From IMG/VR virus record IMGVR_UViG_3300003322_000571, positions 124,001-188,000 of that record: 64,000 bases of DNA; one strand, given 5' to 3'. Shown piece after piece: positions 13,537-32,701 of the stretch. The position numbers were made by a program, and so were the translations under genes. The notes under the pieces are model-generated. The model had not been told where the DNA came from and ran no database searches. It was given only the letters and a program-made list of their open reading frames with translations. Numbering within the stretch: the stretch's first letter is position 1; every line of letters starts with the position of its first letter.

Positions 13537-13546
13537 TGTGACCTAG

Positions 13547-13575
13547 TTGACGTTTGGCAAAGAAAGCTGGATACT
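13547..13575 (+). promoter_or_regulatory. Sigma70-type promoter
   Basis: TTGACG-17-GATACT; short wobble hairpin AAGCTGG/CTGGCTT. Confidence 0.7.
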
Positions 13576-13605: not shown

Positions 13606-14364
13606 ATGGACATCTCTCCGAAGCTGCACAAGATGAACATCAACCACCGGTCGGCGGCTGCTGCTGTGCAGCACACGCGAGATTGGATCGAGGGGATTGT
13701 GGACGGCGACATCGTCGTCAACAACAAGGTGATCGTCGATCCCGCACCTCCGAGCCGTGATGTGATCGCCAACGCGGTCTACTTCGTCAACCATCTGCTC
13801 AGCACCGAGCTGACCACGCAACAACTGGTCGAGCACTACGAGTTGCACAAGACGGAGTCGCGGGCGAAAGCCGATTCGTGGGCGATCACGTTCGCACAGG
13901 CGATCGTCGAGCAACTGGTCAAGGCTGACTGTGTGCTGCTCGCTGGTTCGACCGCTGATCTGATCAAGATGGCGTGGGAACGCGCAACGAAGTCGATCAC
14001 GTGCGCCCGCTATCCCGAAGTGTTCTCGAAGGCAGAAGTCGCTTCGACCACTGGCGGTGAAGTCAAGGCTGTTTCCGACATGGTCGATGTCAAGGTCGAA
14101 GTGAAGGCCGATGGCAAGATCAAGAAGGGCGGCAAGGAGCAGCTGGCGATCGCATTGTACCAGAAGTACGTCGCGTCGCTCAACGGTGCACCGTACGTCA
14201 ACCAGGACTTCATCAAGATCCTCGTCGAAGAGGCTGGCATGACCAAGCCGGGTGCAACGACGTACAACTACAACATGAAGAAGAAGTTCGGTGGTCAGAT
14301 CGAGAAGCGTGCGGACGCTGAGCCGGTTCGCATGCTGGCAGCGCCCAAGAAGAAGGCTGCTTGA
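13606..14364 (+). CDS. Family B protein (C-terminal E.G.T..GA.TY helical domain)
   Basis: EEAGMTKPGATTYNYNMKK; strongly C/G-biased codons. Confidence 0.8.
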   Translation: MDISPKLHKMNINHRSAAAAVQHTRDWIEGIVDGDIVVNNKVIVDPAPPSRDVIANAVYFVNHLLSTELTTQQLVEHYELHKTESRAKADSWAITFAQAIVEQLVKADCVLLAGSTADLIKMAWERATKSITCARYPEVFSKAEVASTTGGEVKAVSDMVDVKVEVKADGKIKKGGKEQLAIALYQKYVASLNGAPYVNQDFIKILVEEAGMTKPGATTYNYNMKKKFGGQIEKRADAEPVRMLAAPKKKAA

Positions 14365-14368
14365 CCTG

Positions 14369-14411
14369 TTGATCAAAATGGTTAGTGAGGGGATGATCTC
14401 TTCACTAACCA
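14369..14411 (+). promoter_or_regulatory. Hairpin-centred promoter
   Basis: TTGATC-17-GATGAT; 14-bp stem 14379-14411 with 2 G-T pairs. Confidence 0.7.
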
Positions 14412-14430
14412 ACTACATCTGTTAGGAGAG

Positions 14431-14895
14431 GTGATGAAATATGTCGTCAGTGTCGCGATCAGCGACCAGATTCCTCATGTCAAGACCACTCTGGCGCGGT
14501 CGGGGATCATCGATGTTTCGTGCGAGCACCAGACCGCTAAGCGTGCAATGGATGATTTCGCCGCAGTGATGACGGCGATTGCTGATCATCCGGGTTCTGG
14601 TCCGTACTGGCAGGTCAACCCGATGCAAGTACTGGACGCGATCCTCAGTCCTCCGCAGGAGAACGAGCAATCGAACGTCAAGATCGAGTTCGAGGCACGT
14701 GACGCCAACGGTGGTCCCACGTTCTCGCTGATCACCGTGGCGCTGAAAAGCGAAGAAGGCGAGACGGCGAACACGACCAATTCGTGCATGCATGCGATGG
14801 CATGCAAGATGCTCGACGTGCTCGAAACCATGATCCACGGTGGTGACCTCCCGACTGAGGAAGCTTCGATCCCTGAAGGTGAAACGATTCACTGA
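14431..14895 (+). CDS. Hypothetical protein
   Basis: GGAGAGG RBS. Confidence 0.75.
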   Translation: MMKYVVSVAISDQIPHVKTTLARSGIIDVSCEHQTAKRAMDDFAAVMTAIADHPGSGPYWQVNPMQVLDAILSPPQENEQSNVKIEFEARDANGGPTFSLITVALKSEEGETANTTNSCMHAMACKMLDVLETMIHGGDLPTEEASIPEGETIH

Positions 14896-14897
14896 TC

Positions 14898-15179
14898 ATG
14901 ATCAAGCTGACCGTTAAGGCAGACTACAAACACCGCCCTCCGGCGGTGTTTTTCGTTACCGGTTACATCGACATGGTGTTCGTGAGCTGGAAGATCCTGT
15001 GGGCACTTACACGGGCTGCTTCCAAGCAGAAAGCGAACATTGTACAGGAAGGTGAGAGCGAAAGCTACGGAGTGCACACACTTCACTTCGTACAAAAGGA
15101 CGGGAACAATTCAACTCCGTTCATTAGCATTGATTTCGAAGAAGTTGACGAGGTCCCCGACGGTTGGGAGCCCACGTAG
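14898..15179 (+). CDS. Hypothetical protein
   Basis: Coupled ORF followed by terminator. Confidence 0.65.
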   Translation: MIKLTVKADYKHRPPAVFFVTGYIDMVFVSWKILWALTRAASKQKANIVQEGESESYGVHTLHFVQKDGNNSTPFISIDFEEVDEVPDGWEPT

Positions 15180-15195
15180 CACACAGCGCCCAGAC

Positions 15196-15228
15196 AAAAG
15201 CCCACCATTGTGTGGGCTTTTTCTTTTG
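15196..15228 (+). terminator. Intrinsic terminator
   Basis: AAAAGCCCAC/GTGGGCTTTT plus T tract. Confidence 0.85.
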
Positions 15229-15471
15229 CAGCTATACAAAAATGCTCCATTGGTTTGAATGCTTGCTCTGAAGACAAACGAGCAGAGACGGATGTCGTTT
15301 CTGCATGATAATGAAATTGTGTGAGCGCAGGAGTCGCTCGGGTCTGTGCGCGATAAGCGTGTCGTTAAGACGGTTTAAAGTGCTCTGTTGTCAAGACTCG
15401 ACAGATGACTGATAGTTCACTCACTGGTTCGGAAACGCAACCGCAGGGACACAAGCAAGAAACTGCTCCTG

Positions 15472-15500
15472 TTGACAAGTTACCCTGAATCAGAGATAGT
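15472..15500 (+). promoter_or_regulatory. Sigma70-type promoter
   Basis: TTGACA-17-GATAGT. Confidence 0.75.
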
Positions 15501-15551
15501 TACCGCACTGAATCAAGTTTCTCTCAACCACCTGTAACAAGGAGTTTCATC

Positions 15552-16196
15552 ATGACCCAAGCCCAAGCCGCTCTGTCGTCCGCCATCGCCCTCCTGGCCA
15601 ACACCGATGCGTTCCGCCCCGTGGCGGCCGACGCCGGTGAAGTCAAGGCGCTCGTCGGCGACAAGATCGTGTTCCTGACCGCCGACAAGAAGGAATCCGA
15701 CGTCCTGACCGTCGTGATGGTCAAAAAGAAGGTGACCAACACCGTGTCCGACGTGAACGGCGAGAAGATGAGCGTGCCGATGACGCACTTCGGCGCCGAC
15801 GACATCGAGCTGGAAGACGGCACGTTCATCCGCCTGGTCAAGTCGGTGATCCCGCCGAAGCCGGGCAAGAAGGGCCGCGGCCGCGTCGAAGGCGCGCCGA
15901 CCAAGGCTGACATCTGCCGCGGCCTGTTCATCGCCGCCCCGGATGCGCCGAAGGCCGTGATGTGCAAGCTGTTCCAGTCGGAAGCCGGCTGCACCCGGAT
16001 GGGCGCGAACACGTACTTCCTGTCGATCGCCAAGGCCTACGCGGCCGGCAAGCTGAAGGACCTCGTTCTGGACGAAGGCGTCGTCGCCCTCGTGAAGAAG
16101 GCGATCGAGGCGGCGCGCGCCGAAGCGGAAGCCCAGGCGGCGGAAGCGTCGGCCGAGACCACGACCGAGCAGTCGACCGAAGAAGCCTCCGCCTGA
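15552..16196 (+). CDS. Family B protein
   Basis: SEAGCTRMGANTYF; acidic Ala/Glu tail. Confidence 0.85.
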   Translation: MTQAQAALSSAIALLANTDAFRPVAADAGEVKALVGDKIVFLTADKKESDVLTVVMVKKKVTNTVSDVNGEKMSVPMTHFGADDIELEDGTFIRLVKSVIPPKPGKKGRGRVEGAPTKADICRGLFIAAPDAPKAVMCKLFQSEAGCTRMGANTYFLSIAKAYAAGKLKDLVLDEGVVALVKKAIEAARAEAEAQAAEASAETTTEQSTEEASA

Positions 16197-16278
16197 TCCT
16201 TGATCGGGTGAAGTGAGAGGGTAGGGGGCATAGCCCCCTTCCTTCGTTGTGTGCATCCACCATTCTACTAGTAAACAT

Positions 16279-16629
16279 ATGCCGATCCTCTCTCAAGATG
16301 AACTGGTGCAACTGATGGTTGCGAATCTGGAAGACGGTACGAAGGAGATCCGCTTCGGTGATCATCTCCGTCCCTATGGAATGATGGATGCGCTCGTGAT
16401 TCGTCGTATCCGCACACCCGCAGGAATCCAGTACTGCGTCCGTGAAACGTCGTACCGCGGCGAAGGCAGCGGCATCTACGACCACGGTGCCGTCGAGATT
16501 GCGAAGTGGGCACGCCGGATCGCTGAACGGTACATGAAACCGCATCAGTCTGTTGTTGTTCAAAAGGTTATCGCTGAAGCTCGTGGCCTCAATGAGCCGA
16601 GCTTCTACGTGACCGAATGCAACACCTGA
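16279..16629 (+). CDS. Hypothetical protein
   Basis: ORF from MPILSQ. Confidence 0.65.
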   Translation: MPILSQDELVQLMVANLEDGTKEIRFGDHLRPYGMMDALVIRRIRTPAGIQYCVRETSYRGEGSGIYDHGAVEIAKWARRIAERYMKPHQSVVVQKVIAEARGLNEPSFYVTECNT

Positions 16630-16895
16630 TCTTCTGCCACGACCGCCAGTACGGCGGTCTCGGTATCCAGTTCGTGATCACCCCGAACGATGTGTTCGAG
16701 GCGACAGGCGAGCTAGTTGCCCACACAGCCCTCCTCCCGGAGGGCTTTCGTCCGTCTCAGTCGTCGAGATGGAAGTACGTGCCCCCGTATGGTACAGCAC
16801 CTGAGTACGGAGTTCAACAGGGCGTGATCGAACTGATCGCTGCTGGAGTCAAATACTCCGAGGCCCTCGATCAATATGTCAACGGGACAACATGA
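16617..16895 (+). CDS. Hypothetical protein
   Basis: Coupled ORF. Confidence 0.6.
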   Translation: MQHLIFCHDRQYGGLGIQFVITPNDVFEATGELVAHTALLPEGFRPSQSSRWKYVPPYGTAPEYGVQQGVIELIAAGVKYSEALDQYVNGTT

Positions 16896-17002
16896 CTGCT
16901 AAACAAGCACTTGAGCGAGCTCGAATGGCTCGTGCTCGGTCGTACTACGTTGCACTGATGAAACAACTTGGTGTGCGCCAGTTGACGTTGTTCCTTGTTT
17001 GA
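16892..17002 (+). CDS. Small basic peptide (36 aa)
   Basis: ATGA overlap; MTAKQALERARMARARSYY... Confidence 0.45.
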   Translation: MTAKQALERARMARARSYYVALMKQLGVRQLTLFLV

Positions 17003-17033
17003 GGGTCTGGGTAAAAATACTCAAAAGTGACCC

Positions 17034-17076
17034 GTTGTTAAGTCACCTAGTTTTACATATAGTTGACTTCAACAAC
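17034..17076 (+). promoter_or_regulatory. Hairpin-enclosed promoter
   Basis: TTGTTA-17-TATAGT; GTTGTTAAGTCA/TGACTTCAACAAC arms. Confidence 0.6.
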
Positions 17077-17112
17077 TGAGGAAATGTTCCTCGCAACGAA
17101 AGGAGAGAGCAA

Positions 17113-17298
17113 ATGCGTCATCCCGCACAGGGCAAACCGAATCGTTCTGAAGAAGGACGTGCCCAACGTGCCGCTCGCCACGCCCGCGCTGGCCGCCTGC
17201 AAGAGGTGCGCAACCGCGAGCTGGAGGCCGCTGACGACGCATTCTCCGATGGTGATCACGAGGCCGATGTCTGGGCCGATGAGCACGAGCTCGCGTGA
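17113..17298 (+). CDS. Small hypothetical protein
   Basis: AAGGAGAG RBS. Confidence 0.7.
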   Translation: MRHPAQGKPNRSEEGRAQRAARHARAGRLQEVRNRELEAADDAFSDGDHEADVWADEHELA

Positions 17299-17309
17299 TC
17301 GTTTCTAGT

Positions 17310-17705
17310 GACCACTAGTAAACATTAAGCCGGGCTTCGTGAGGTGGCCCACCGATGCAGTAATCTTTTGTACGCTCAACATCAGATGACATACGGCATG
17401 AAGGTGCTCAAGTAGCACCTGGGAGGCGCGCCGGCCGGACATACCGCGCCGTGGCCGGCGCGCAACTCCCAAACCTGCACAGCGGCAAGCATTTCGCCCC
17501 GCAACCGACAACCAGTGAGTCACGACATAGTGCGTTACGCATAGGGCTTTTGACATGTGCCCGCCCCGAAGTCTAACCGATGGCCATAGGGTCGCTCGCC
17601 GGGATGAAAGCGAGCACACACTAACCAAGTGGTAACCGAGTGCGCTGGCGACCGGAATTGCTGGCGCATTCAACATTTCCAGACTTCGAATTCAGACTAG
17701 AAAGG
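17310..17705 (+). ncRNA. Structured non-coding RNA or long leader candidate
   Basis: Several strong stems (17402-17420, 17421-17470, 17638-17671 with 4 G-T pairs). Confidence 0.45.
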
Positions 17706-17710
17706 TCTAC

Positions 17711-17893
17711 ATGTCCCGCAATTCCAAGAACGCCAAGCGCCACATCGCCGAGAAGGCCGCCTCCACCCAGCGCGTGAAGGGCGACAAGGGCCCCACCAAG
17801 ACGACGCCGAAGCACGGCAAGAAGAAGGCGTGGTGGCAGCTGTTCCCGTCGTACGAGGCGTACATCAAGGGCGCCAAGAAGCAGAAGGACTAA
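17711..17893 (+). CDS. Small Lys-rich basic protein
   Basis: GPTKTTPKHGKKKAWWQ; strong codon bias. Confidence 0.8.
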   Translation: MSRNSKNAKRHIAEKAASTQRVKGDKGPTKTTPKHGKKKAWWQLFPSYEAYIKGAKKQKD

Positions 17894-17923
17894 GCGGTTC
17901 TCCGCACTGTCGCTGCAGACACT

Positions 17924-17950
17924 AAAGGGCTCAACAGAGCCCTTTTGTTT
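17924..17950. terminator. Bidirectional-type intrinsic terminator
   Basis: AAAGGGCTC-AACA-GAGCCCTTT. Confidence 0.8.
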
Positions 17951-18045
17951 TGTCCGCACTATAAGACAGTGAGGCGCTCTCGCCGTCCATCCCGCGTTAG
18001 CTTCGAATCATGTGGTGATTATATTCGAAAGAGGGTAAAAGTCAA
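17950..18045 (-). ncRNA. Candidate sRNA family X copy 2 with promoter
   Basis: TTGACT-16-TATAAT then CATGATTCGA...GGGATGGACGGCGAGAGCG, running into the terminator. Confidence 0.6.
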
Positions 18046-18079
18046 CGAGAGAATTTGCCGGGCGGCGGGGGCGCCCCCG

Positions 18080-18108
18080 TTGTCAACTTACTCTGGTTGT
18101 GTGATAGT
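18080..18108 (+). promoter_or_regulatory. Sigma70-type promoter
   Basis: TTGTCA-17-GATAGT. Confidence 0.65.
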
Positions 18109-18139
18109 TGACTCATCAGTTAACAACCACGAGAACAAA

Positions 18140-18445
18140 ATGACGTTCGAACAAGAGCTGTCGGTCATCGAACAACTGTTCGGTGTCAAGATCGAAATCC
18201 AAGCCGCGCCGGGTTCGCCTGTGTGGTACACCTTCAGTGGCCGACAGTTGACGGTCGAATGCATCGAGGGCATCATCACGCAGAACAGCGGGGTGCTTGA
18301 GTGGCAAGACCCGTTGTCGTGGCATTGCAACAACAACGACAATGTCGCGTACCTGGTGGTCAAGCTGACCGACACCGATGAAGATGTCGTGTATGATCGG
18401 CTGTTCGCGTTCGACTTGACCGACAACGAATTCCACATTGTCTGA
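18140..18445 (+). CDS. Hypothetical acidic protein
   Basis: ORF from MTFEQEL. Confidence 0.7.
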   Translation: MTFEQELSVIEQLFGVKIEIQAAPGSPVWYTFSGRQLTVECIEGIITQNSGVLEWQDPLSWHCNNNDNVAYLVVKLTDTDEDVVYDRLFAFDLTDNEFHIV

Positions 18446-18466
18446 CAACTGACCGGGGAGGTCAAC

Positions 18467-18736
18467 ATGTTCGCCTTCGCCTATGCGGTGTACAGCCGCA
18501 ATCAAGCCCAGCCTCCGCACATTGTTGTCGGTGGCAGTGGCATGGAGTGCGTCAACCGCATCAAGCCGTACATCGAACGCCTGCTCGAGGATGAGCACAA
18601 GGAACGTTTCGGTGGCAATGCAGTCAAGACCGCATACGAAGACCTCAAGCAGGTCGGCACGGTCGCTGAGCTGGAGGTGTTTCTCAGCCGGTGGCTGCCG
18701 TATCGCGGCATGCTGGTTTCCGACCAGATCAAGTAA
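18467..18736 (+). CDS. Hypothetical protein
   Basis: GGAGG RBS. Confidence 0.75.
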   Translation: MFAFAYAVYSRNQAQPPHIVVGGSGMECVNRIKPYIERLLEDEHKERFGGNAVKTAYEDLKQVGTVAELEVFLSRWLPYRGMLVSDQIK

Positions 18737-18898
18737 CGAGTGCCCTGTTGATCCCACGTGGGATCTTTGGGATAGTACACACATCGCGAGCGCAAACAAC
18801 AAAGCGCTTGCGAGACGGACAGAATCAAAACTGACCCGTTGTCCAGAAACGAAATTGTGGGATAGTAGACACATCCCAACGCAACCAGGAGAGATGAA

Positions 18899-19537
18899 AT
18901 GACCACGCTGATCCAAACCCTGTTCGCTGCCAACGAAGGCCGCACCGTCGAAGCGAACAACGACCAGAACAAGGGCATCTTCAAGGTCGCCAAGCTGGCC
19001 GACAAGATCGGCACGATGAAGAACGGCGACAAGGCCGAGTACGTCGTGCTGACGAACGAGAACGACGAAGCGGTCGTCATCATGCTCCACCCGAACGTCG
19101 CCAAGAGCCTGTTCGAGAAGGGCGAAGACGCCAAGACCGGCTACAAGATGGTGCCCGTCGAGACGACCGACGAGCAGACCGTCACGACCGCTGAAGTCGG
19201 TGGTGCCCCCGCGGAAGTGATCCTGGCGACGTCGGAAGGCGAAGTGCTCGCCGCTGTCCCCGCCGGCACGACCGAAGAAGCGTCCGCTGAAACGGCTCCG
19301 GAAGACAACGGTGCCGCCGAAGCGAGCACGGAAACGACCGAAGCTGCCGCGGAAGAGCCGAAGGAGCCGTCGAAGAAGGAGCTGACGATCGCTCTGGTGC
19401 ACGCCGGCTGGGATGCCAAGCTCGCGCGCAAGGACATCATCGCCAAGATGATCGCCGAAATCGGCATGAGCGGCCCCTGCGCGAACACGTACTACCAGAA
19501 CGTGAAGTCGGGCACCTGGGGCGGCCGTAAGGGCTAA
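18899..19537 (+). CDS. Family B protein
   Basis: AEIGMSGPCANTYYQNVK after an Ala/Glu/Thr linker. Confidence 0.85.
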   Translation: MTTLIQTLFAANEGRTVEANNDQNKGIFKVAKLADKIGTMKNGDKAEYVVLTNENDEAVVIMLHPNVAKSLFEKGEDAKTGYKMVPVETTDEQTVTTAEVGGAPAEVILATSEGEVLAAVPAGTTEEASAETAPEDNGAAEASTETTEAAAEEPKEPSKKELTIALVHAGWDAKLARKDIIAKMIAEIGMSGPCANTYYQNVKSGTWGGRKG

Positions 19538-19546
19538 TCCCCACGC

Positions 19547-19573
19547 CAAGAGGGCTTCGGCCCTCTTGCTTTG
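19547..19573 (+). terminator. Intrinsic terminator (UUCG loop)
   Basis: CAAGAGGGC-TTCG-GCCCTCTTG. Confidence 0.8.
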
Positions 19574-19626
19574 ACAAGCGTATTGGTATACAGTACGCTT
19601 ATCCAAGCAACTCTCAAGGACATATC

Positions 19627-19836
19627 ATGCCTTTGACGTGGTACATCGTTTTCTCGCTGCTGATGTCGTTCTGCGTGCTGTTCGCTTCGAAGCCGGGGAC
19701 GACTGGCATCCTGATCAAGCTCGCCGCCATCGTCCACATTGCGCTGTCGCTGTGGACTCTCCACCAAAACCACGACCTCGTCAAGCAAGCGCATCTCTTC
19801 GCTGAGAAGCTGCCGAGCGTCACGATCGAGAAGTGA
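19627..19836 (+). CDS. Small membrane protein
   Basis: Two hydrophobic helices; AAGGA RBS. Confidence 0.7.
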   Translation: MPLTWYIVFSLLMSFCVLFASKPGTTGILIKLAAIVHIALSLWTLHQNHDLVKQAHLFAEKLPSVTIEK

Positions 19837-19843
19837 GGGCAAC

Positions 19844-19999
19844 ATGCTCCCCGTCAAGATCAAACAGCCGCTGGAACGGCTCGAGAAGATGGTGCTCGTC
19901 AGCATCTACGAGGGCAAGCGTCTGCTCGGCTGGCGCTTGGTCAAAGCGCGCAAGACCGGCAACGAGTATCGCATTCCTCACGACTCACGTTGCAAGTGA
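19844..19999 (+). CDS. Small basic protein
   Basis: GAGG RBS. Confidence 0.55.
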   Translation: MLPVKIKQPLERLEKMVLVSIYEGKRLLGWRLVKARKTGNEYRIPHDSRCK

Positions 20000-20003
20000 T
20001 ACC

Positions 20004-20744
20004 ATGAACAACATCAAAGACATGCTCCAGTTCGACGGCGTGGCCGCTGCTGAGGATATGACCGGGCGCAGTGCTCGTTTCGACGAGAATACCGGTTTGT
20101 TGGCGCTCGCTCTGTCGGTAGCGCACAACGATGCGCTGTCCAAGGCTCTGGCGTCCGAGGACGACACGCAGTACAACAACAAGCTGACCAACTACCAGCG
20201 GATCATCACCAGCATGGGGTTCGAGCTCGCGCTGCGCACTCCGTTCGTCGGTCAGGCGTGGGGTGATGAGCCTGTACCGGATGAAGCGCAGTACATCTAC
20301 GCGCACCGTGCCGGCATGCTGCTGATCTTCGATACGTACGGAGGCGACAGCGTCAACTCCGCCAAGGTGTACTACGCGCACCGTCCTCACCAGCTCTCGA
20401 GCTGTCATTACAGCAGCGGTGGCTGGTACTCTGCAGAAGAATGGAAGGATTCACGTTATCCTTCTGACATGTGGTGGTTTGGCGATCACGATGCACGGGT
20501 CGCTCTCCGTCACACGATTCGGCGGCTGCACGATAGTGGGCAATTCCTGACTCCGTGGCCGAAGCCGCATAGCACGCGCAGCTCTCCGTCGGTCTGGATG
20601 TGCCATTACATGGACCACAAGAAGTTGGACAAGTTGGGCAGTCCGGAGTACAAGGAGGCGATCCGCAATGCGGAGGCCAGGCTCCATCAACTCCCGGATT
20701 GGGTCAAGGAGATGATTTCCCCGGTCCTTCCCGTCCAGGACTGA
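20004..20744 (+). CDS. Hypothetical protein
   Basis: Long ORF with phage-like codon use. Confidence 0.75.
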   Translation: MNNIKDMLQFDGVAAAEDMTGRSARFDENTGLLALALSVAHNDALSKALASEDDTQYNNKLTNYQRIITSMGFELALRTPFVGQAWGDEPVPDEAQYIYAHRAGMLLIFDTYGGDSVNSAKVYYAHRPHQLSSCHYSSGGWYSAEEWKDSRYPSDMWWFGDHDARVALRHTIRRLHDSGQFLTPWPKPHSTRSSPSVWMCHYMDHKKLDKLGSPEYKEAIRNAEARLHQLPDWVKEMISPVLPVQD

Positions 20745-20803
20745 CTCGACGACGAGGACGAAGATCAAGGGTGATATTACCCAGTTGATTTCCACAATGA
20801 GAC

Positions 20804-20830
20804 AGGGGAGCGTTAACGCTCCCCTTCCTA
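20804..20830 (+). terminator. Terminator-like hairpin
   Basis: AGGGGAGCG-TTAA-CGCTCCCCT. Confidence 0.65.
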
Positions 20831-20850
20831 TTACAACTGCAGAGGTCCTT

Positions 20851-21129
20851 GTGGAAGCAACACTTGACGAGAAGTTCGTCGGCACCGTGAGGTCGCCGAT
20901 TGAATCATTCTGGCAGGGTTGTACGCTGAAGAAGGCCGCTGATGCGGAGCACTTCTTTGACGTGCCGAATGTCGATGCGATAGGCTATTGCCTTGACCAC
21001 AACCACTTTTCCAGTCTGTCCCCAGAAGCAAAGCGGCTGATCCACCGTGTGATCGATATCTACGGCCGCCATGCTGTCTGCGATTATCTGGCTGACCACA
21101 TCAAGCTGGTCAAGCAGAAAACACACTGA
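20851..21129 (+). CDS. Hypothetical protein
   Basis: GAGG RBS, GTG start. Confidence 0.6.
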   Translation: MEATLDEKFVGTVRSPIESFWQGCTLKKAADAEHFFDVPNVDAIGYCLDHNHFSSLSPEAKRLIHRVIDIYGRHAVCDYLADHIKLVKQKTH

Positions 21130-21622
21130 TGTCCTGTTTGCACTTGTTGCACTGATACGCCTTGCCCTTGCGGGCTTGCGTATGCTGATAGTACGACAGT
21201 TGGTGCGACATACAGCCACAGTTCCACAGGTACGTCTTGACGGTTTTCGCCGTGTCGTACCTGTGCGTGATCTCAGCCTTCGCTTCGAATAGCTTCATCA
21301 TCGACTGCCATTCCCGTCCATGCTGGAAAGGGACGTTGCCGTTGATGTCTTGCACGATCAAGTGCGCCAGCTCATGCGGAACGCTGTTCGCGATGTACGC
21401 GTCAGTGTTGTCCCGCAGGTAAATCATGTTCAAATCGATCGTGCGCGTAGCGTATTCGGCGTAGCCTGCGCTCGCACCACGGATACGATACACGATATTC
21501 GGACGTTCGACAACGATGCGGAGCTCCCGCTCAGCGATCGCGATCAGGTTGTCAACGCGGGCATTGACCCGCTTTTGTAGTTCCAGCTTAGTCACATTTA
21601 ACTCCCTGGCGAACTGCCCCAT
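21110..21622 (-). CDS. sprT: SprT-like zinc metalloprotease
   Basis: PHELAH, HG.EW, C-terminal CGC...CNKC zinc motif. Confidence 0.85.
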   Translation of the reverse strand: MGQFARELNVTKLELQKRVNARVDNLIAIAERELRIVVERPNIVYRIRGASAGYAEYATRTIDLNMIYLRDNTDAYIANSVPHELAHLIVQDINGNVPFQHGREWQSMMKLFEAKAEITHRYDTAKTVKTYLWNCGCMSHQLSYYQHTQARKGKAYQCNKCKQDISVFSA

Positions 21623-21818
21623 TATTGTTATTGAGCAGGACGCAATGTAACGATGCAAATACGTGGTTTACGATGTGGTCTGTAAAAATAATTTGGTGTA
21701 TAACAACCAGTTCAATCGATGACGATGTCGCTAGCGAACGTTATTGACCAATGAAATAAAAGTTGCCGAAAGGGTGAAACAGCGTTGATCAAACCGCGTG
21801 GTTCAAGTAGCTGCCTCG

Positions 21819-21926
21819 TTGATCTTTACCCTAACTAGTCAGATAGTGTGCTTCATGCGATAGGGATTCGTTGTTGAGAAGCAGCTACAACTGCTAATCA
21901 ACATTCAAACGAGTTAGCGATCGCAT
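21819..21926 (+). promoter_or_regulatory. Promoter plus long hairpin 5' leader
   Basis: TTGATC-17-GATAGT; 72-nt four-segment hairpin 21855-21926. Confidence 0.65.
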
Positions 21927-21970
21927 CAGTCCTCTTCTTTTGTGTTCGTCAATCTTTGAAAGGAATCATC

Positions 21971-22426
21971 ATGAGCAACGTCACCGAAAAGGGCCTCATC
22001 GTTCTGAAGGCCGCTTCCAAGCACAACACGCGCGAGAAGATCGCCCGCCGCCTCGGCCAAAGCGTCGCCCAAGTCAACGGCGCCCTGACCGGTCTCAAGC
22101 GCAACGGCCTGATCGAGATCGATGCCGAAGGCGTGATCACCGTGACCCCCGACGCCGCTCCCTACCTGAGCAAGCGCGCCGGTGGCACCGCTGAACGCGC
22201 CACCCGCACCAACACGAAGATGGCCGCTGCGCGTCGCCTGTTCGACAAGTACGCGTCGAAGGAAGGTCGTGGCGGTCTGATCGCTCGCTTCATGAAGGAG
22301 ATCGGCCTGACCGAGAAGGGCGCGTCGACCTACTTCCAGACGATCCGTGTGCAGGCCGGTGTGCCGGCGGGCGCTTTCCAGCGTGCTCCGCGCAAGCCTT
22401 CGACCGTTTCGCGCAAGACGTCGTGA
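21971..22426 (+). CDS. Family B protein with N-terminal HTH
   Basis: REKIARRLGQSVAQVNGALTGLKRNGLI (winged-HTH-like) plus KEIGLTEKGASTYFQ. Confidence 0.8.
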   Translation: MSNVTEKGLIVLKAASKHNTREKIARRLGQSVAQVNGALTGLKRNGLIEIDAEGVITVTPDAAPYLSKRAGGTAERATRTNTKMAAARRLFDKYASKEGRGGLIARFMKEIGLTEKGASTYFQTIRVQAGVPAGAFQRAPRKPSTVSRKTS

Positions 22427-22446: not shown

Positions 22447-22475
22447 AAGGGGAGCCATCGGCTCCCCTTTTTTAT
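22447..22475 (+). terminator. Intrinsic terminator
   Basis: AAGGGGAGCC/GGCTCCCCTT plus T tract. Confidence 0.85.
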
Positions 22476-26212: not shown

Positions 26213-26309
26213 TGTAGCAACTACAACACTCCAAAGGCAACAGGGCACTGCCCTGTTGCCTTCGCTGGTCAATTGTGCGATACTGGCTTCATTGTAATAA
26301 GGAGCTGAT

Positions 26310-26606
26310 ATGAGCCGACCGACGTCAGAAGAGATCCGCGCATTCGCTGCTCGTATGGAGCAGAACGACTTCTTTGAGCTCGTTGCTCATCATATGCTGT
26401 TCGTCGAGCAGGCGATCGCGACCGATGCGTTGGCAACAGAGCTCGACGCTGACGATACGTACAATCGCTCGTTGGCTCAGGAGCTGTTCCACGACCCAGA
26501 GTACCTCGCAAACTGCTGTGAGGCAACGCTGTCTGGCATGGGGTTTGAAGAAGCTGTCGTCGAGCAGCTGAAGCTGCTCGCTCCGTCGTACGTTCGGCCC
26601 CGTTGA
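26310..26606 (+). CDS. Acidic hypothetical protein
   Basis: AAGGAG RBS. Confidence 0.75.
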   Translation: MSRPTSEEIRAFAARMEQNDFFELVAHHMLFVEQAIATDALATELDADDTYNRSLAQELFHDPEYLANCCEATLSGMGFEEAVVEQLKLLAPSYVRPR

Positions 26607-28551: not shown

Positions 28552-28589
28552 TTGTCTGTCTGACAATAAGATGGGATACTTATCCCATC
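28552..28589 (+). promoter_or_regulatory. Hairpin promoter
   Basis: TTGTCT-17-GATACT; GATGGGAT-ACTT-ATCCCATC. Confidence 0.8.
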
Positions 28590-28611
28590 TTAAACGCGCT
28601 GGAGAAGCGAA

Positions 28612-28941
28612 ATGGCACTGCAAGTTACGAAGTATTCGGTTGAACATTCGAAGTCGATGTCTTTTAACGACACTCGAACTGTGTTGTTCGTGTCGTCGTT
28701 CGATATTCATTCTATGCACATTACTGAACTGACGGGGACAATCGAAGAGATTGCGAAGTACATGATCGGTGTGTGGGCGTTCGGTGAAGATGGTGACTAC
28801 GAATACGATGAAGTTCAACAACTTCAGATCGATGAGTACTACAACGAACTCGCTGAAGAATACGAAGCTTGGGAGATTCTCGATGGTGTGATCGATATGA
28901 TCAACGGTGACGGAGTATATCAGTTGATCTACAAAAACTGA
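28612..28941 (+). CDS. Acidic protein, paralogue of 29001
   Basis: GTIEEIAKYM...INGDGVY. Confidence 0.8.
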   Translation: MALQVTKYSVEHSKSMSFNDTRTVLFVSSFDIHSMHITELTGTIEEIAKYMIGVWAFGEDGDYEYDEVQQLQIDEYYNELAEEYEAWEILDGVIDMINGDGVYQLIYKN

Positions 28942-28945
28942 CCTG

Positions 28946-28982
28946 TTGTCCAAATGACCAAATGGGAGTATTATACTCCCAT
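28946..28982 (+). promoter_or_regulatory. Hairpin promoter class A
   Basis: TTGTCC-17-TATTAT. Confidence 0.85.
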
Positions 28983-29000
28983 CAATCAACGGAGGCCCAA

Positions 29001-29351
29001 ATGGCTTTGAAAGTCGAAGACTACTATCCCGACCAAGGTAAGTGCAACGCTTCGTCGTTGCAAGACGACGTCAAGATCATCCTGACGATCACGCCGTGGG
29101 ATCGCGGTGGCGACACGTCGCCCGAGTACAAGCGCATCGAGGGCACGGTCGAAGAGGTCGTCAAGTACTTGCTCCTCCTCGGCAACTACGGTGGTGCGGA
29201 AAGCGTCGACGACCTCGAAGACGAGGACGAAGTCGAAGAGTTCAACGAAGATTTCAACGTTTTCGTCGCGAACAACGCTCCGCACAAGATCATCGACGCA
29301 ATCATCATTACCATCAACGGCGACGATGGTTACGAGGTAACGTACCTCTAA
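29001..29351 (+). CDS. Acidic protein, paralogue of 28612
   Basis: GTVEEVVKYL...INGDDGY. Confidence 0.8.
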   Translation: MALKVEDYYPDQGKCNASSLQDDVKIILTITPWDRGGDTSPEYKRIEGTVEEVVKYLLLLGNYGGAESVDDLEDEDEVEEFNEDFNVFVANNAPHKIIDAIIITINGDDGYEVTYL

Positions 29352-29368
29352 TCCGTCTTACGGACAAC

Positions 29369-29398
29369 AAAAAGCTCTCCTCGTGAGAGCTTTTTTAA
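29369..29398 (+). terminator. Intrinsic terminator
   Basis: AAAAAGCTCTC-CTCGT-GAGAGCTTTTT. Confidence 0.85.
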
Positions 29399-29487
29399 TT
29401 GCTCCTGTTGCCCAAACCCTATATTCGTGTATACTTGGCTTCATCGGTTAACACAACTCACACGAGTTTTTCAACAGGAGAGCTGAG

Positions 29488-30003
29488 ATGGATGCACGAG
29501 TCGTCGAGAGTGTTCTGGGCAACATCAAGGGCGCGACGTTCGTCGGCCTCGACACGGAAACGGTCGTCGATCTGAAGGGCGGCAAGAAGAACGAGATGCA
29601 GGGCCGCGTCACGAAGGTGATGACCGGCGCTCTCGTGCAAGTGTTCGCCCGCGGTGGCGAAGGCGGTGGCTACGAGAACAAGGTCAACCGTCGCCTCGAC
29701 AAGGAAGGCAAGGAAGTCGAGTTCGAAGTCGGTCCGCGTAAGTGGGGCACGCGTCTCGAAGGCAAGCCGTTCGTCGAGCACAAGGGTGAACTGTACCTCG
29801 AAGTCATCTTCGAGCGCCCGGGGGAATCCCACTACCTGCTGGACGGCAAACCGATCCAAGCTGCCGAAATCATCGGCCTCGACGAAGGCCCCGTGAAGGC
29901 TGGTGAACAGGGCGGCCTGGAAGACAAGGTCATCCTGCGCACGTTCAAGTTCGACAGCATCAAGGCGCTGCGCGTCAACAAGACGGAAGTCAAGGCGCGC
30001 TGA
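29488..30003 (+). CDS. Hypothetical phage protein (strong codon bias)
   Basis: Own promoter, RBS and terminator. Confidence 0.85.
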   Translation: MDARVVESVLGNIKGATFVGLDTETVVDLKGGKKNEMQGRVTKVMTGALVQVFARGGEGGGYENKVNRRLDKEGKEVEFEVGPRKWGTRLEGKPFVEHKGELYLEVIFERPGESHYLLDGKPIQAAEIIGLDEGPVKAGEQGGLEDKVILRTFKFDSIKALRVNKTEVKAR

Positions 30004-30020
30004 AAGTCAACAGCGCCAAC

Positions 30021-30050
30021 AAAGAGCCCACCTCGTGTGGGCTTTTTTAT
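30021..30050 (+). terminator. Intrinsic terminator
   Basis: AGCCCAC-CTCGT-GTGGGCT plus T tract. Confidence 0.85.
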
Positions 30051-30112
30051 TGCCCACTTGATCAATCGACATAGTTGTGTTATTATATCAGCATTGTCAA
30101 ACGGAGATCGAA

Positions 30113-30445
30113 ATGCCGCAAGTTGCCATCCAAGAATTTGGCGTTGAACAGTTGATCGAGGTTCTATCGAACGCCGGTTATGAGCACGACGCGACCGAGT
30201 TCAACGATTCGCTGATTCACTATTTCGGTGAGAAGGACAACCAGTACGTGTTCGCTGTGTCGTTCCTCAATACTGAGGACACGGGCGACGAGGGATTGTA
30301 CTACGTGACGACACTGTTCGTCGAGCGCGACGAAACCGGCCTGCTGTGCGGTGAGTGGGAAGGAAGGCCTTCCAAAGAAGACCTGACGAACGACCAAGTC
30401 ATTGCGTACTTCGACGGTCTCAAAGACCAAGCGTCGTACAAATAA
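30113..30445 (+). CDS. Acidic hypothetical protein
   Basis: GGAG RBS. Confidence 0.75.
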   Translation: MPQVAIQEFGVEQLIEVLSNAGYEHDATEFNDSLIHYFGEKDNQYVFAVSFLNTEDTGDEGLYYVTTLFVERDETGLLCGEWEGRPSKEDLTNDQVIAYFDGLKDQASYK

Positions 30446-30550
30446 TCGTCAAAGTCAACAGCTACAAAGAGTCCTGCAGAGATGTATGGGCTCTGTAGCT
30501 GTTTGGTTCGTTTGGTTGTATACTAGACGCACTGTCCAACGGAGATCAAC

Positions 30551-30757
30551 ATGTCGATTAAGCTCGCTCTAGTCCAGCACAACCGTCCTGGTTTCTATGT
30601 GACGTTGGTGGAAGTGCCCAGCACGTTTACACCTTCGCAAGAACTCCAGCTACGTTACGACGTTGCACGTGAGTTTGAAATGACCGACAACGACGGTGAG
30701 TTCCTCGTGATCGAGAACGGTAACGTGATCGATCGTCGTCAGATTCCTCGCTTCTAA
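30551..30757 (+). CDS. Small hypothetical protein
   Basis: GGAG RBS. Confidence 0.75.
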   Translation: MSIKLALVQHNRPGFYVTLVEVPSTFTPSQELQLRYDVAREFEMTDNDGEFLVIENGNVIDRRQIPRF

Positions 30758-30769
30758 CAGACTGCCCTA

Positions 30770-30807
30770 TTGACCAGAGATGCGTCTGGTGGGATACTGG
30801 ACGCATC
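30770..30807 (+). promoter_or_regulatory. Hairpin promoter class B
   Basis: TTGACC-17-GATACT; 12-bp stem with 2 G-T pairs. Confidence 0.85.
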
Positions 30808-30824
30808 CAATCAAGGAGCGACAA

Positions 30825-31091
30825 ATGCACACGACGCAACAAGAGTTCATTCAATTGACCGTGCTGATGGCGGTCGGCACTGGCCTGACGGGCACGAACC
30901 CCGTCCGCTACCTCAACCAACTGCTTCGTCAGAACCAGTGGTCGGAGGAGACCGATGTCGTCAAGCTGACGGTTGCTTTCCAACCGCAACTGAACTCGAT
31001 CCGTGTGCACGTCGATGCGATCGAGCGTACGATCACGTACTGGATCTCGATCAACATCGATACGCTCGCCGTCGAGTTCGACGTCAGCTGA
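30825..31091 (+). CDS. Hypothetical protein
   Basis: AAGGAG RBS. Confidence 0.75.
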   Translation: MHTTQQEFIQLTVLMAVGTGLTGTNPVRYLNQLLRQNQWSEETDVVKLTVAFQPQLNSIRVHVDAIERTITYWISINIDTLAVEFDVS

Positions 31092-31095
31092 CCTG

Positions 31096-31136
31096 TTGTT
31101 AGACGAGTGCGTTTGGGCGATACTAGACGCACTCGT
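31096..31136 (+). promoter_or_regulatory. Hairpin promoter class B
   Basis: TTGTTA-17-GATACT; 14-bp stem 31103-31136. Confidence 0.85.
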
Positions 31137-31154
31137 TCAACAAAGGAGTGCCAA

Positions 31155-31370
31155 ATGGCCAACACGCTTCCCAAGGAAATCCTCGAACAGCTCTCGTTCA
31201 TTCCCTTTCCCGAAGGTCTGGACTGTGAACAGGTGGGCGACTGGCTCGCGAGCGAAGGTGTGGATGGTGACGTGATCGTGCTCGAGACGGGTCTGGTCGT
31301 GCCGTTCGATAGCGTTGAATACACGGAAACGCTGCTCAAGAAGTGCGTCAAGTTCTTTAACGACGACTGA
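31155..31370 (+). CDS. Acidic small protein
   Basis: AAGGAG RBS. Confidence 0.75.
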   Translation: MANTLPKEILEQLSFIPFPEGLDCEQVGDWLASEGVDGDVIVLETGLVVPFDSVEYTETLLKKCVKFFNDD

Positions 31371-31459
31371 CGGACAAGATCAACAGGGGGCTTAGCCCCC
31401 TTGATTGAAGTGTCGTTGTGGTAGACGATAGCTCAATCAAAGTCACACAGGGATCGATC

Positions 31460-31681
31460 ATGAAGAAAGTTCCGAAGGACTACGCTGCGTTCCTCAAGCC
31501 GTACATCGATGCTCGAGTGCTGACGATCGAATCCGGATCGAAGCACAACAAGGCGGTTCGATCGGACGGTCGGTTCTGGGTGATCCCCAGCAGCCCGAGC
31601 GATCATCGCGGGTTCCTCAACTTCAAGAGCGATATCCGCCGGTTCGTCAGCCAAGCGCCGCAGCACCCCGTTGTCCAGTGA
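31460..31681 (+). CDS. HicA-like (dsRBD-fold) protein
   Basis: GSKHNK...PSSPSDHRGFLNFKSDIRRF. Confidence 0.65.
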   Translation: MKKVPKDYAAFLKPYIDARVLTIESGSKHNKAVRSDGRFWVIPSSPSDHRGFLNFKSDIRRFVSQAPQHPVVQ

Positions 31682-31711
31682 CGATCGTTGTGGGATAGTA
31701 CTCCCATCAAC
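31671..31711 (+). promoter_or_regulatory. Hairpin promoter
   Basis: TTGTCC-17-GATAGT; TGGGA/TCCCA stem. Confidence 0.8.
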
Positions 31712-31725
31712 AACTGGAGAGCAAC

Positions 31726-31914
31726 ATGCACACGGGCCACCACATCTCCAACTTCGTCCAGCGATTCGGCTGCACTGACGAGGTTATTGACGACGATCGG
31801 TTCATCGTTCTGTTCAACTGCATCGATGCTCCCGACCACATCGCGTGCGGTAGCGTGATCAACAACGGGCGTGATCAGCCTATCCAGAACTTCATCAGTC
31901 GCGACGATGAGTGA
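31726..31914 (+). CDS. Small hypothetical protein
   Basis: GGAGAG RBS. Confidence 0.7.
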   Translation: MHTGHHISNFVQRFGCTDEVIDDDRFIVLFNCIDAPDHIACGSVINNGRDQPIQNFISRDDE

Positions 31915-31918
31915 TCAG

Positions 31919-31959
31919 TTGACTTGAACGGCGGTTGGTGGGATAGTACTCCCATCAAC
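31919..31959 (+). promoter_or_regulatory. Hairpin promoter
   Basis: TTGACT-17-GATAGT; GTTGGTGGGA/TCCCATCAAC. Confidence 0.85.
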
Positions 31960-31973
31960 AACTGGAGAGCAAC

Positions 31974-32237: not shown

Positions 32238-32271
32238 CCTAAACATGGGATGGGAGTATGATACTCCCATC
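32234..32271 (+). promoter_or_regulatory. Hairpin promoter class A
   Basis: TTGACC-17-TATGAT; perfect 10-bp stem. Confidence 0.85.
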
Positions 32272-32294
32272 TTAACCGCACTGGAGGAACAACA

Positions 32295-32690: not shown

Positions 32691-32701
32691 AGGAGTGCAC
32701 G

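What the first reader, a model, noticed from the sequence alone, without database searches (positions are those of the whole stretch)
13606..22426. Four dispersed, highly expressed early proteins share a C-terminal E.G.T..GA.TY domain
Seen: 13606, 15552, 18899 and 21971 end in EEAGMTKPGATTY, SEAGCTRMGANTY, AEIGMSGPCANTY and KEIGLTEKGASTY, each fused to an unrelated N-terminus (one is HTH-like). Each has its own strong promoter and extreme host-like codon bias. Inference: a modular helical, probably nucleic-acid-binding domain used for early host takeover, and a candidate reader of the promoter hairpins.
Basis: partly seen in the sequence, partly recalled or inferred. Interest (0 to 1): 0.6.

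Follow-up and report, generated by a model that had tools for sequence, protein, structure and literature searches.

The report
Unnamed phage helix-turn-helix-like tether domain
Four small genes in the early region of an uncultivated 350-kb soil phage share a real, basic, three-helix C-terminal domain; it belongs to a large phage domain family that has no name and most likely tethers varied effector parts to DNA, although binding is untested.

Summary
Four + strand genes (13606-14364, 15552-16196, 18899-19537, 21971-22426) end in a homologous domain of about 55 residues. A profile built from any three finds the fourth as the best non-training hit in the six-frame genome (E 1e-7 to 7e-3). There is no fifth copy. 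The N-termini are unrelated by BLASTP.

A profile search found 2,877 cluster representatives (536 at E<=1e-10). Among the best 148, the domain is mostly C-terminal and often in 2-4 tandem copies. Its fusion partners include SprT-like proteases, ADP-ribosyltransferases and winged-helix domains. No Pfam, NCBIfam or PDB sequence entry covers the domain. PHROGs has only an unannotated family that matches 6 of 149 copies.

AlphaFold gives a confident three-helix bundle (pLDDT 85). Its best structural neighbours are tri-helical HTH DNA-binding domains, but every match is weak. 95% of copies carry net positive charge.

Each gene has a sigma70-like promoter motif, a strong Shine-Dalgarno and codon bias among the strongest in the genome. 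Early, high expression is therefore plausible but not measured.

The proposed role as reader of promoter hairpins has no support. Hairpins across the -10 exist at 12 of 23 island promoters, but clearly at only one of these four genes.

Most likely this is a new HTH-like DNA-tethering module. Binding is inferred.

The parts
13606..14364 (+). Gene P0001 (252 aa): N-terminal part of unknown fold plus the C-terminal domain
   Evidence: ORF and translation. A close homologue, P0103, exists in the protein library. No Pfam, PHROG or NCBIfam hit.
14122..14307 (+). Domain copy 1 (P0001 residues 173-234), net charge +5
   Evidence: HMM envelope. Genome search places it at 14119-14298, E 1.6e-17. Charge.
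13547..13575 (+). Promoter-like site of P0001 (TTGACG-N17-GATACT), with a hairpin across the -10
   Evidence: Fold z-score -2.35.
15552..16196 (+). Gene P0002 (214 aa): N-terminal part unknown, then the domain, then an acidic helical tail
   Evidence: GC3 0.907 and Nc 27.5, the most biased ORF in the genome.
15894..16058 (+). Domain copy 2 (P0002 residues 115-169), net charge +5
   Evidence: (E 3.5e-15).
15472..15500 (+). Promoter-like site of P0002 (TTGACA-N17-GATAGT). A second site lies at 15388-15416.
   Evidence: No hairpin (z +0.5).
18899..19537 (+). Gene P0003 (212 aa): SH3/Tudor-like beta-barrel (1-88), disordered acidic linker (89-153), then the domain (159-204)
   Evidence: AlphaFold model built from a 12-row family alignment. 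The N-terminal domain is conserved in 10 other cluster representatives. Fold matches: Spindlin Tudor Z 6.1, CarD Z 5.3.
19361..19534 (+). Domain copy 3 (P0003 residues 155-212), net charge +5
   Evidence: E 7e-18; pLDDT 85; helices 10-23, 28-39 and 43-55 of the modelled piece 150-212.
18748..18866 (+). Two promoter-like sites upstream of P0003 (18748-18776 and 18839-18866)
   Evidence: Only weak hairpins (z -0.5 and -0.8).
21971..22426 (+). Gene P0004 (151 aa): N-terminal winged-helix-like domain plus the C-terminal domain; whole-protein net charge +17
   Evidence: Sub-threshold hits to 14 HTH-type or related Pfam families (best DUF4423, 21.8 bits against a cut-off of 30). Charge.
22205..22375 (+). 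Domain copy 4 (P0004 residues 79-135), net charge +7
   Evidence: (E 1.5e-17).
21819..21847 (+). Promoter-like site of P0004 (TTGATC-N17-GATAGT)
   Evidence: No hairpin (z -0.5).
22447..22469 (+). Terminator-like hairpin with a T-run just after P0004
   Evidence: 10 pairs, 7 of them G-C, then TTTTATTT.
21110..21658 (-). Neighbouring SprT-like metalloprotease gene, divergent from P0004. Elsewhere this family is found fused to the domain.
   Evidence: Pfam SprT-like, 47.9 bits against a cut-off of 25.6. Fusions in 4 of 148 representatives. The best ESM Atlas shape match is a viral SprT-like cluster (TM 0.70).

Best explanation
The four genes encode unrelated effector or adaptor N-termini. Each is joined, often through a disordered linker, to one copy of a basic three-helix domain of about 55 residues. 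This domain family has not been described and is abundant in large phages.

I read the domain as a helix-turn-helix-like nucleic-acid tether, most likely for double-stranded DNA. It would place whatever it is fused to on host or phage DNA soon after infection. The fused part can be a wHTH, an SH3/Tudor-like barrel, and in other phages a SprT-like protease or an ADP-ribosyltransferase.

Shown:
- homology of the four copies;
- the size and architectures of the family;
- the predicted fold;
- the positive charge;
- the promoter-like motifs and the codon bias.

Inferred:
- DNA binding;
- early timing and high expression;
- a role in host takeover.
For: Homology and family size:
- Leave-one-out recovery of each copy.
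- 2,877 library representatives at E<=1e-3 and 536 at E<=1e-10.
- Among the best 148, the last copy ends within 15 residues of the C-terminus in 130. 84 carry 2-4 tandem copies.

Fold and chemistry:
- AlphaFold with 149 rows gives pLDDT 85 and three helices. In the full-length P0003 model the domain reaches about 95.
- The Foldseek PDB list is dominated by tri-helical DNA-binding HTH domains: homeodomains, Mos1/Tc3 transposase HTH, DeoR DNA-binding domain, Mu I-beta.
- ESM Atlas structural neighbours include HTH_Tnp_1, Myb, SpoIIID and GerE families.
- Net charge averages +4.2 and is positive in 95% of copies.
- The conserved polar positions are Lys, Arg, Thr, Tyr and Asn at the N-caps of helices 1 and 2 and along helix 3.

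Partners are DNA-associated:
- SprT-like proteases, wHTH families and an HC2 histone-like tail.
- In this window an SprT-like gene lies next to P0004.

The pattern recurs in other phages:
- Several copies per genome: Aeromonas phage Ahp1 5 matches, XacN1 4, RAS14 3, Xoo-sp13 2, G004 7, G001 5.
- In the relative G001, the same promoter motif lies directly upstream of its domain genes.
Against: - No structural match is significant (Foldseek E>=0.4, VIA Z<=6.1). Three-helix bundles are common, so the HTH assignment rests on the make-up of a weak hit list.
- No HTH Pfam family matches the domain consistently. The GerE and WH_Rok hits on a few copies are below threshold.
- Helix 3 is nearly invariant across thousands of proteins (G-A-x-T-Y at 94-100%). 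That is unusual for sequence-specific DNA readers. It fits non-specific DNA binding, but it fits a single conserved protein or RNA target equally well.
- No binding, expression or timing data exist.
- The host is unknown.
Confidence: 0.55

Rival explanations
1. The domain is a protein-protein interaction module. It docks diverse phage effectors onto one conserved, acidic host protein, for example a part of RNA polymerase, in the way sigma region 4, T4 AsiA or gp33 use small helical domains.
For: - Helix 3 is nearly invariant across the family, which suggests one conserved target.
- The domain is fused to ADP-ribosyltransferases. From established knowledge, T4 Alt/Mod enzymes of that type modify RNA polymerase.
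- The four-copy profile gave a weak hit to T4 gp33 (E 0.4).
- The N-terminal domain of P0003 weakly resembles the Tudor-like RNA-polymerase-interacting domains of CarD, Mfd and UvrD.
Against: - The gp33 hit weakened as the profile deepened: absent with 10 rows, E 1.8 with 149 rows.
- Tandem arrays of 2-4 copies and a net charge of +4 to +7 fit a polymer ligand such as DNA better than a single protein site.
- The partners (SprT-like, wHTH, HC2-like tail) point to DNA.
Confidence: 0.2
2. One reading: the domain specifically reads the hairpin or cruciform-forming promoters of the early island, or the matching RNA hairpins, and so regulates phage transcription.
For: - Inverted repeats across the -10 are real and enriched: 12 of 23 sites have z<-2, against 11% of control windows.
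- The arms differ between sites but stay complementary.
- A structure-specific ligand would explain the invariant helix 3.
Against: - No evidence links the two features.
- Three of the four genes here lack a clear hairpin at their own promoter.
- The domain is abundant in phages with other promoter types. G004 has no match to this motif in the stretch examined. Aeromonas phage Ahp1 is a T4-like Straboviridae phage, though its promoters were not examined here.
- Fusions to proteases and ADP-ribosyltransferases do not suggest a transcription factor.
Confidence: 0.08
3. The domain is a DNA-associated packaging or ejection tag. It would carry proteins into the capsid with the genome and into the next host, like basic internal head proteins and the injected T4 Alt.
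For: - The domain is basic and probably associates with DNA.
- It is fused to ADP-ribosyltransferases at the N-terminal side.
- About 44% of phage ADP-ribosyltransferases lie in contexts that suggest packaging into the head (PMC9503650).
Against: - In this phage and in G001 the genes lie behind sigma70-like promoters, in a block of small genes far from the structural genes.
- This fits synthesis early in infection, not late.
Confidence: 0.05
4. The shared motif is a chance or compositional similarity among unrelated small proteins.
For: - Pairwise identity is only 20-36%.
- One leave-one-out E-value is modest (7e-3).
Against: - All four leave-one-out tests rank the omitted copy first among the non-training hits.
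- All four copies score E 3.5e-15 to 7e-18 against the 149-row family profile.
- Thousands of homologues share the same signature.
Confidence: 0.01

Closest known systems
Tri-helical helix-turn-helix DNA-binding domains (homeodomain-like fold; Tc3/Mos1 transposase HTH, Mu transposase I-beta, B. subtilis DeoR DNA-binding domain)
   Same: - About 50 residues in three helices with a short turn between helices 2 and 3.
- Basic.
- These domains are the top Foldseek and ESM Atlas neighbours.
- The helix 3 consensus T-Y-[YF]-Q-N-x-K-K resembles the homeodomain W-F-Q-N-R-R pattern. This is recalled from memory and is only a lead.
   Different: - No significant sequence or structure score to any of these families.
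- Helix 3 is almost invariant across the family, whereas sequence-specific readers vary there.
- The domain is nearly always C-terminal, often tandem, and fused to enzymes.
Tandem three-helix repeat proteins (Myb/SANT repeats, RecX)
   Same: - 2-4 head-to-tail copies of a three-helix unit of about 55 residues.
- RecX appears among the structural matches (Z 4.8-5.3).
- A Myb-containing cluster appears in the ESM Atlas.
   Different: - No sequence relationship was detected.
- In this window every protein has a single copy.
T4 MotB (early, toxic, non-specific DNA-binding protein; PMC7827196, PMC6070864)
   Same: - An early phage gene in a block of small non-essential genes.
- Built in modules: an SH3-like N-terminal domain plus a DNA-binding C-terminal domain. 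P0003 pairs an SH3/Tudor-like barrel with the domain in a similar way.
   Different: - The MotB C-terminal domain is predicted to be an OB fold, not a helical bundle.
- No homology, so MotB is a functional analogue only.
CarD/CdnL (Tudor-like RNA-polymerase-interacting domain plus helical DNA-contacting domain)
   Same: P0003 has a five-stranded barrel that matches the CarD N-terminal domain at Z 5.3 (17% identity over 60 residues), followed by a helical basic domain.
   Different: - Spindlin Tudor domains (Z 6.1) score higher than CarD, and Hfq (Z 4.3) scores nearly as well. The match therefore shows only a generic small barrel.
- P0003 has a 65-residue acidic linker that CarD lacks.
- Binding to RNA polymerase is not shown.
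T4 gp33 (late co-activator that binds the beta flap)
   Same: A 24-residue stretch of gp33 aligns with helices 2-3 of the four-copy profile.
   Different: E 0.4 only. The hit was lost or weakened to E 1.8 with deeper profiles. Rejected as a relative.

Membership tests
The domain family itself (four window copies as homologues) | Each copy is recovered by a profile built without it | tested here: met
   Leave-one-out E values of 1.2e-7, 7.4e-3, 8.4e-6 and 1.6e-5, each the best non-training hit. E 3.5e-15 to 7e-18 against the 149-row profile.
Helix-turn-helix superfamily (tri-helical, homeodomain-like) | Three-helix core with a tight turn between helix 2 and helix 3 | tested here: met
   AlphaFold pLDDT 85. 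Helices at 10-23, 28-39 and 43-55, with a 3-residue turn. The same result appears in the full-length model.
Helix-turn-helix superfamily (tri-helical, homeodomain-like) | Significant structural or profile match to a solved or curated HTH domain | tested here: inconclusive
   HTH domains head the Foldseek list, but with E 0.4-2 and TM about 0.5. VIA Z is no higher than 6.1 and the hits are mixed. No consistent Pfam HTH hit. No PDB sequence hit.
Helix-turn-helix superfamily (tri-helical, homeodomain-like) | Binds nucleic acid through helix 3 | not testable with these tools
   Only indirect evidence: net charge +4.2 on average, and conserved K, R, T, Y, N and K positions.
Pfam GerE/LuxR or WH_Rok | Score at or above the Pfam gathering threshold | tested here: not met
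   GerE 19.6-22.1 bits against a cut-off of 23.5, and WH_Rok 20.8-22.7 bits against 27.6, on copies in four long proteins only. None on the window copies.
T4 gp33 | Detectable sequence homology | tested here: not met
   E 0.4 with 4 rows, absent with 10 rows, E 1.8 with 149 rows.
Winged helix-turn-helix (P0004 N-terminus) | Pfam wHTH family at the gathering threshold | tested here: inconclusive
   14 HTH-type or related Pfam families hit residues about 15-65, all below their cut-offs. The best is DUF4423, 21.8 bits against 30. phrog_35 transcriptional repressor, E 3e-4.
CarD-like RNA-polymerase-interacting Tudor domain (P0003 N-terminus) | Tudor-like barrel that stands above other small barrels | tested here: inconclusive
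   CarD Z 5.3, Spindlin Z 6.1, Hfq Z 4.3. Foldseek E 0.1-0.3.
CarD-like RNA-polymerase-interacting Tudor domain (P0003 N-terminus) | Binds the beta lobe of RNA polymerase | not testable with these tools
   No informative result was obtained here. This needs a pull-down or a two-hybrid test with the host's RpoB.
SprT-like metalloprotease (neighbouring gene, 21110-21658, minus strand) | Pfam PF10263 above the gathering threshold | tested here: met
   47.9 bits against a cut-off of 25.6. An HELAH (HExxH-type) motif is visible in the translation.

The most novel reading that the evidence does not exclude
The domain is a phage-specific reader of a DNA structure or state rather than of a sequence. 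Candidate targets are the hairpin or cruciform-forming early promoters, modified phage DNA, or supercoiled or injected DNA ends. It would deliver very different cargoes to that target (transcription adaptors, SprT-like proteases, ADP-ribosyltransferases) across thousands of large phages. That would make it a general addressing module of phage early programmes, which would explain its nearly invariant helix 3.
Probability: 0.12. Interest if true: 0.75.

Novelty: new variant of a known kind. Interest (0 to 1): 0.5.

Why it matters
Early genes of large phages are mostly unannotated. This work defines a compact, easily recognised module: K-x3-A-x2-[IL]-[YF] ... R-K-x-I-I-x2-F ... G-[LM]-[TS]-x2-G-A-x-T-Y-[YF]-x-N-x-K-K. 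It marks at least 2,877 protein clusters, occurs several times per genome in distantly related large and jumbo phages, and is absent from Pfam, NCBIfam and the PDB sequence set. PHROGs has only an unannotated family that matches 6 of 149 copies.

If the domain is a DNA tether, it gives a first functional handle on hundreds of 'hypothetical' early proteins. It also identifies which SprT-like proteases and ADP-ribosyltransferases act on DNA-bound targets. Finally, it offers a small domain that can be tested by EMSA, localisation and toxicity assays in laboratory hosts.

The fold class itself is ordinary. The interest lies in the breadth of the family, its invariance and its fusion pattern.

Tried and rejected
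- **T4 gp33 relationship.** A weak hit with the 4-row profile was lost or weakened with deeper profiles. Rejected.
- **Family libraries.** Pfam, PHROGs and NCBIfam scans of the four proteins and of 148-149 family members found no family that covers the domain. Only phrog_18416 (unknown function) matched 6 of 149 copies.
- **PDB.** Sequence profile searches found nothing significant.
- **Cultured phages.** Megablast of the region against cultured phages gave no match. tblastn of P0003 and of an Ahp1 protein found only Aeromonas phage Ahp1.
- **Complex prediction.** A prediction of the P0003 N-terminal domain (1-92) with Xanthomonas RpoB 1-480 returned 'no answer' (score 0.00). This is evidence neither for nor against binding. 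A first attempt with another reference name was not held.
- **Atlas search.** The ESM Atlas search on the N-terminus of P0001 gave no usable hit.
- **First hairpin test.** It allowed loops of at most 10 nt and a window that ended at the -10. It found no enrichment and was wrong in design. The repeat with 46-nt windows across the -10 found the hairpins.
- **Bacterial genomes.** Presence in bacterial chromosomes or prophages was therefore not tested.
- **T4 MotB.** Considered as a relative. The paper predicts a KOW domain plus an OB fold, so it is only an analogue.
- **Sequencing runs.** The DNA occurs in root and soil metagenomes. No listed holder is on record as RNA. One run guessed to be RNA carries three short contigs at 18888-19141, 20395-20579 and 21899-22096. 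Contigs cannot show expression.


Full report
**Setting**

The window is bases 124,001-188,000 of a 350,089-bp IMG/VR virus record. A 984-residue head-tail adaptor (phrog_211) is 36-37% identical to proteins of the jumbo phages Xanthomonas XacN1 and Xoo-sp13 and Stenotrophomonas CM1 and RAS14. The phage is therefore an uncultivated, distant member of that group. Its DNA occurs in root and soil metagenomes.

The genome carries 56 tRNA genes and has 47% G+C. A block at about 135-163 kb (window about 11,500-39,500) has 53-57% G+C.

**Check of the observation**

The four ORFs and their motif strings are present as described. The similarity extends over about 55 residues (A1 and A2).

An HMM of all four copies finds no fifth copy in the six-frame translation of the genome. 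In leave-one-out tests, the omitted copy is always the best non-training hit (E 1.2e-7, 7.4e-3, 8.4e-6, 1.6e-5), and the next hits have E>0.2. The N-terminal parts show no similarity to one another.

**Expression signals**

- Each gene is preceded by a site of the form TTGAC-N17-GATA[CG]T and by an AGGAG-type Shine-Dalgarno.
- The genome has 43 such sites against 10.9 in shuffles. 25 of them lie in 137-160 kb, 23 of these on the + strand. A generic sigma70 scan agrees (16 found against 3.9 expected).
- A strong terminator-like hairpin follows P0004.
- The four genes have GC3 of 0.78-0.91 and Nc of 27.5-37.5. Outside the block the means are 0.49 and 49. P0002 is the most biased ORF in the genome.
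- Together with the phage's own 56 tRNAs, this fits genes translated by the host's apparatus early in infection of a G+C-rich host. That is an inference. No run on record as RNA holds the stretch.

**The family**

Pattern scans of viral contigs found relatives in four other large contigs. They include an orthologue of P0003, an orthologue of P0001, a protein with two copies, and stand-alone proteins of 77 and 88 residues.

A 10-row profile searched against 1.84 billion representatives found 2,877 proteins at E<=1e-3 and 536 at E<=1e-10, with lengths of 63-844 residues. Among the best 148:
- 130 have the last copy within 15 residues of the C-terminus;
- 64 have one copy, 78 have two, 5 have three and 1 has four.

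No Pfam family covers the domain. The partners are SprT-like proteases (4), ADP-ribosyltransferases (3), several wHTH families and one HC2 histone-like tail. PHROGs holds only an unannotated family that matches 6 of 149 copies. NCBIfam and PDB sequence searches found nothing. Source names are 'hypothetical protein' or refer to the fused enzyme. ESM Atlas clusters are 84-100% viral.

Several copies per genome is the rule: Aeromonas phage Ahp1 (Straboviridae) 5 matches, XacN1 4, RAS14 3, Xoo-sp13 2, contig G004 7 and contig G001 5. All are annotated as hypothetical in the cultured phages examined.

In G001, the same promoter motif lies directly upstream of its domain genes. At least three of the window copies have closer relatives in other phages than in this genome. 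They are old paralogues, not recent duplicates.

**Fold**

With 149 rows, AlphaFold gives pLDDT 85 and three helices: 10-23, 28-39 and 43-55 of the piece P0003 150-212.

- The Foldseek PDB list is headed by homeodomains, Mos1 and Tc3 transposase HTH domains, the DeoR DNA-binding domain and Mu I-beta. All have E 0.4-2 and TM about 0.5.
- An exhaustive VIA-align search gives Z no higher than 6.1 and a mixed list in which wHTH and HTH domains are common.
- BFVD matches are uncharacterised phage proteins.
- The best ESM Atlas shape match is the C-terminus of a viral SprT-like cluster (TM 0.70, rmsd 1.5 over 54 residues).

Column statistics give this signature:
- K at 99% at the N-cap of helix 1;
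- R/K at 96% followed by K at 57% at the start of helix 2;
- T/S at 100% in the turn;
- G 94%, A 97%, T 98%, Y 100%, Y/F 93%, N 60% and K/R 85% along helix 3.

Net charge is +5 to +7 in the window copies and positive in 95% of all copies.

**Other parts of the four proteins**

- **P0004.** The N-terminus gives sub-threshold hits to 14 HTH-type or related Pfam families.
- **P0003.** It belongs to a conserved family (10 further representatives). Its model shows a small barrel (1-88, pLDDT 80-93), a disordered acidic linker (89-153) and the domain. The barrel matches Spindlin Tudor domains (Z 6.1), the CarD/CdnL N-terminal domains (Z 4.9-5.3), Mfd and UvrD Tudor-like domains, and Hfq. This shows a generic SH3/Tudor-like fold. 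The CarD-like reading is only a lead.
- **P0001 and P0002.** Their N-termini remain unassigned.

**Mechanism**

The most economical reading is a basic HTH-like module that tethers its cargo to DNA. The reasons are the fold neighbours, the charge, the kind and position of the conserved residues, the tandem arrays and the DNA-associated partners. An SprT-like gene also lies next to P0004.

The near-invariance of helix 3 argues against sequence-specific recognition. It fits backbone or shape recognition, but a single conserved protein or RNA target cannot be excluded. I give the DNA tether 0.55, a protein-docking module 0.2, a specific hairpin reader 0.08, a packaging tag 0.05 and chance 0.01.

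**The hairpin claim**

My first test missed the hairpins because of its design. When 46 nt across the -10 are folded, 12 of 23 island sites have z<-2, against 11% of control windows. The arms differ between sites but stay complementary. The hairpins are therefore real.

However, only P0001's site among the four genes shows one. G004 carries the domain but has no match to this promoter motif in the stretch examined. Nothing connects the domain to the hairpins.

**Comparison and novelty**

The fold class (tri-helical HTH-like) is ordinary. The family itself is in none of the curated libraries or papers consulted. Two jumbo-phage surveys mention many HTH factors, SprT-like peptidases and ADP-ribosyltransferases, but term searches in them found no mention of this module. 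T4 MotB is a functional analogue with different folds.

I rate the finding a new variant of a known kind, with interest 0.5.

Noticed in passing
window 28552-36340 (also 13547); sites at 28552, 30770, 31096, 31671, 31919, 32647, 32988, 33341, 33697, 34833, 36295: Inverted repeats of 5-14 bp bracket or include the -10 hexamer of the sigma70-like promoter motif. 12 of 23 sites fold with z<-2, against 11% of control windows. The arm sequences differ between sites but remain complementary, which suggests selection for a DNA or RNA structure at these promoters.
   Followed up: partly
window about 11500-39500 (genome 135-163 kb): A block of about 60 small ORFs from a crude caller, mostly on the + strand, has G+C of 0.53-0.57 and mean GC3 of 0.67. 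The rest of the genome has 0.47 and 0.49. The block holds 25 of the genome's 43 promoter-motif sites. It is probably the early region, with codon usage unlike the rest of the phage.
   Followed up: partly
genome 332868-332944 and 344214-344286 (outside the window); tRNAs inside the window at 60171-60243 and 60393-60467: The phage has 56 tRNA genes, including two with anticodon CUA (amber-suppressor type). TAG ends only 22 of 467 crudely called ORFs. No recoding was assumed or tested.
   Followed up: no
window 21110-21658 (-): An SprT-like zinc metalloprotease gene (Pfam 47.9 bits; HELAH, an HExxH-type motif, in the translation) lies divergently next to P0004. In other phages this protease family is fused to the domain studied here.
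   Followed up: partly
window 18899-19162 (P0003 residues 1-88): A conserved SH3/Tudor-like barrel family, with 10 further cluster representatives, always followed by an acidic disordered linker and the C-terminal domain. It weakly resembles the CarD, Mfd and UvrD domains that bind RNA polymerase.
   Followed up: partly
window 13541-13546, 18742-18747, 26250-26255, 26597-26602, 30764-30769 and others: A conserved GCCC[CT]G-like stretch lies immediately upstream of the TTGAC element in many of the promoter-motif sites. It may be an upstream extension of the motif.
   Followed up: no
L008 3626-4384; P0062, P0067, P0088 (library proteins): Other phages carry two domain copies in one small protein, or two N-terminal copies joined to a C-terminal ADP-ribosyltransferase of the exoenzyme type (608-844 residues). 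One is named 'MAG: ADP-ribosyltransferase [Vampirovibrionia bacterium]' on a 3.7-kb contig.
   Followed up: partly
window 18888-19141, 20395-20579, 21899-22096: A small public run guessed to be RNA (X4, organism coded) holds three short contigs; two, over the 5' parts of P0003 and P0004, are near-identical, the one inside the 19833-20744 ORF has 13 differences in 185 bases. Contigs cannot show expression, and the run type is not on record.
   Followed up: partly
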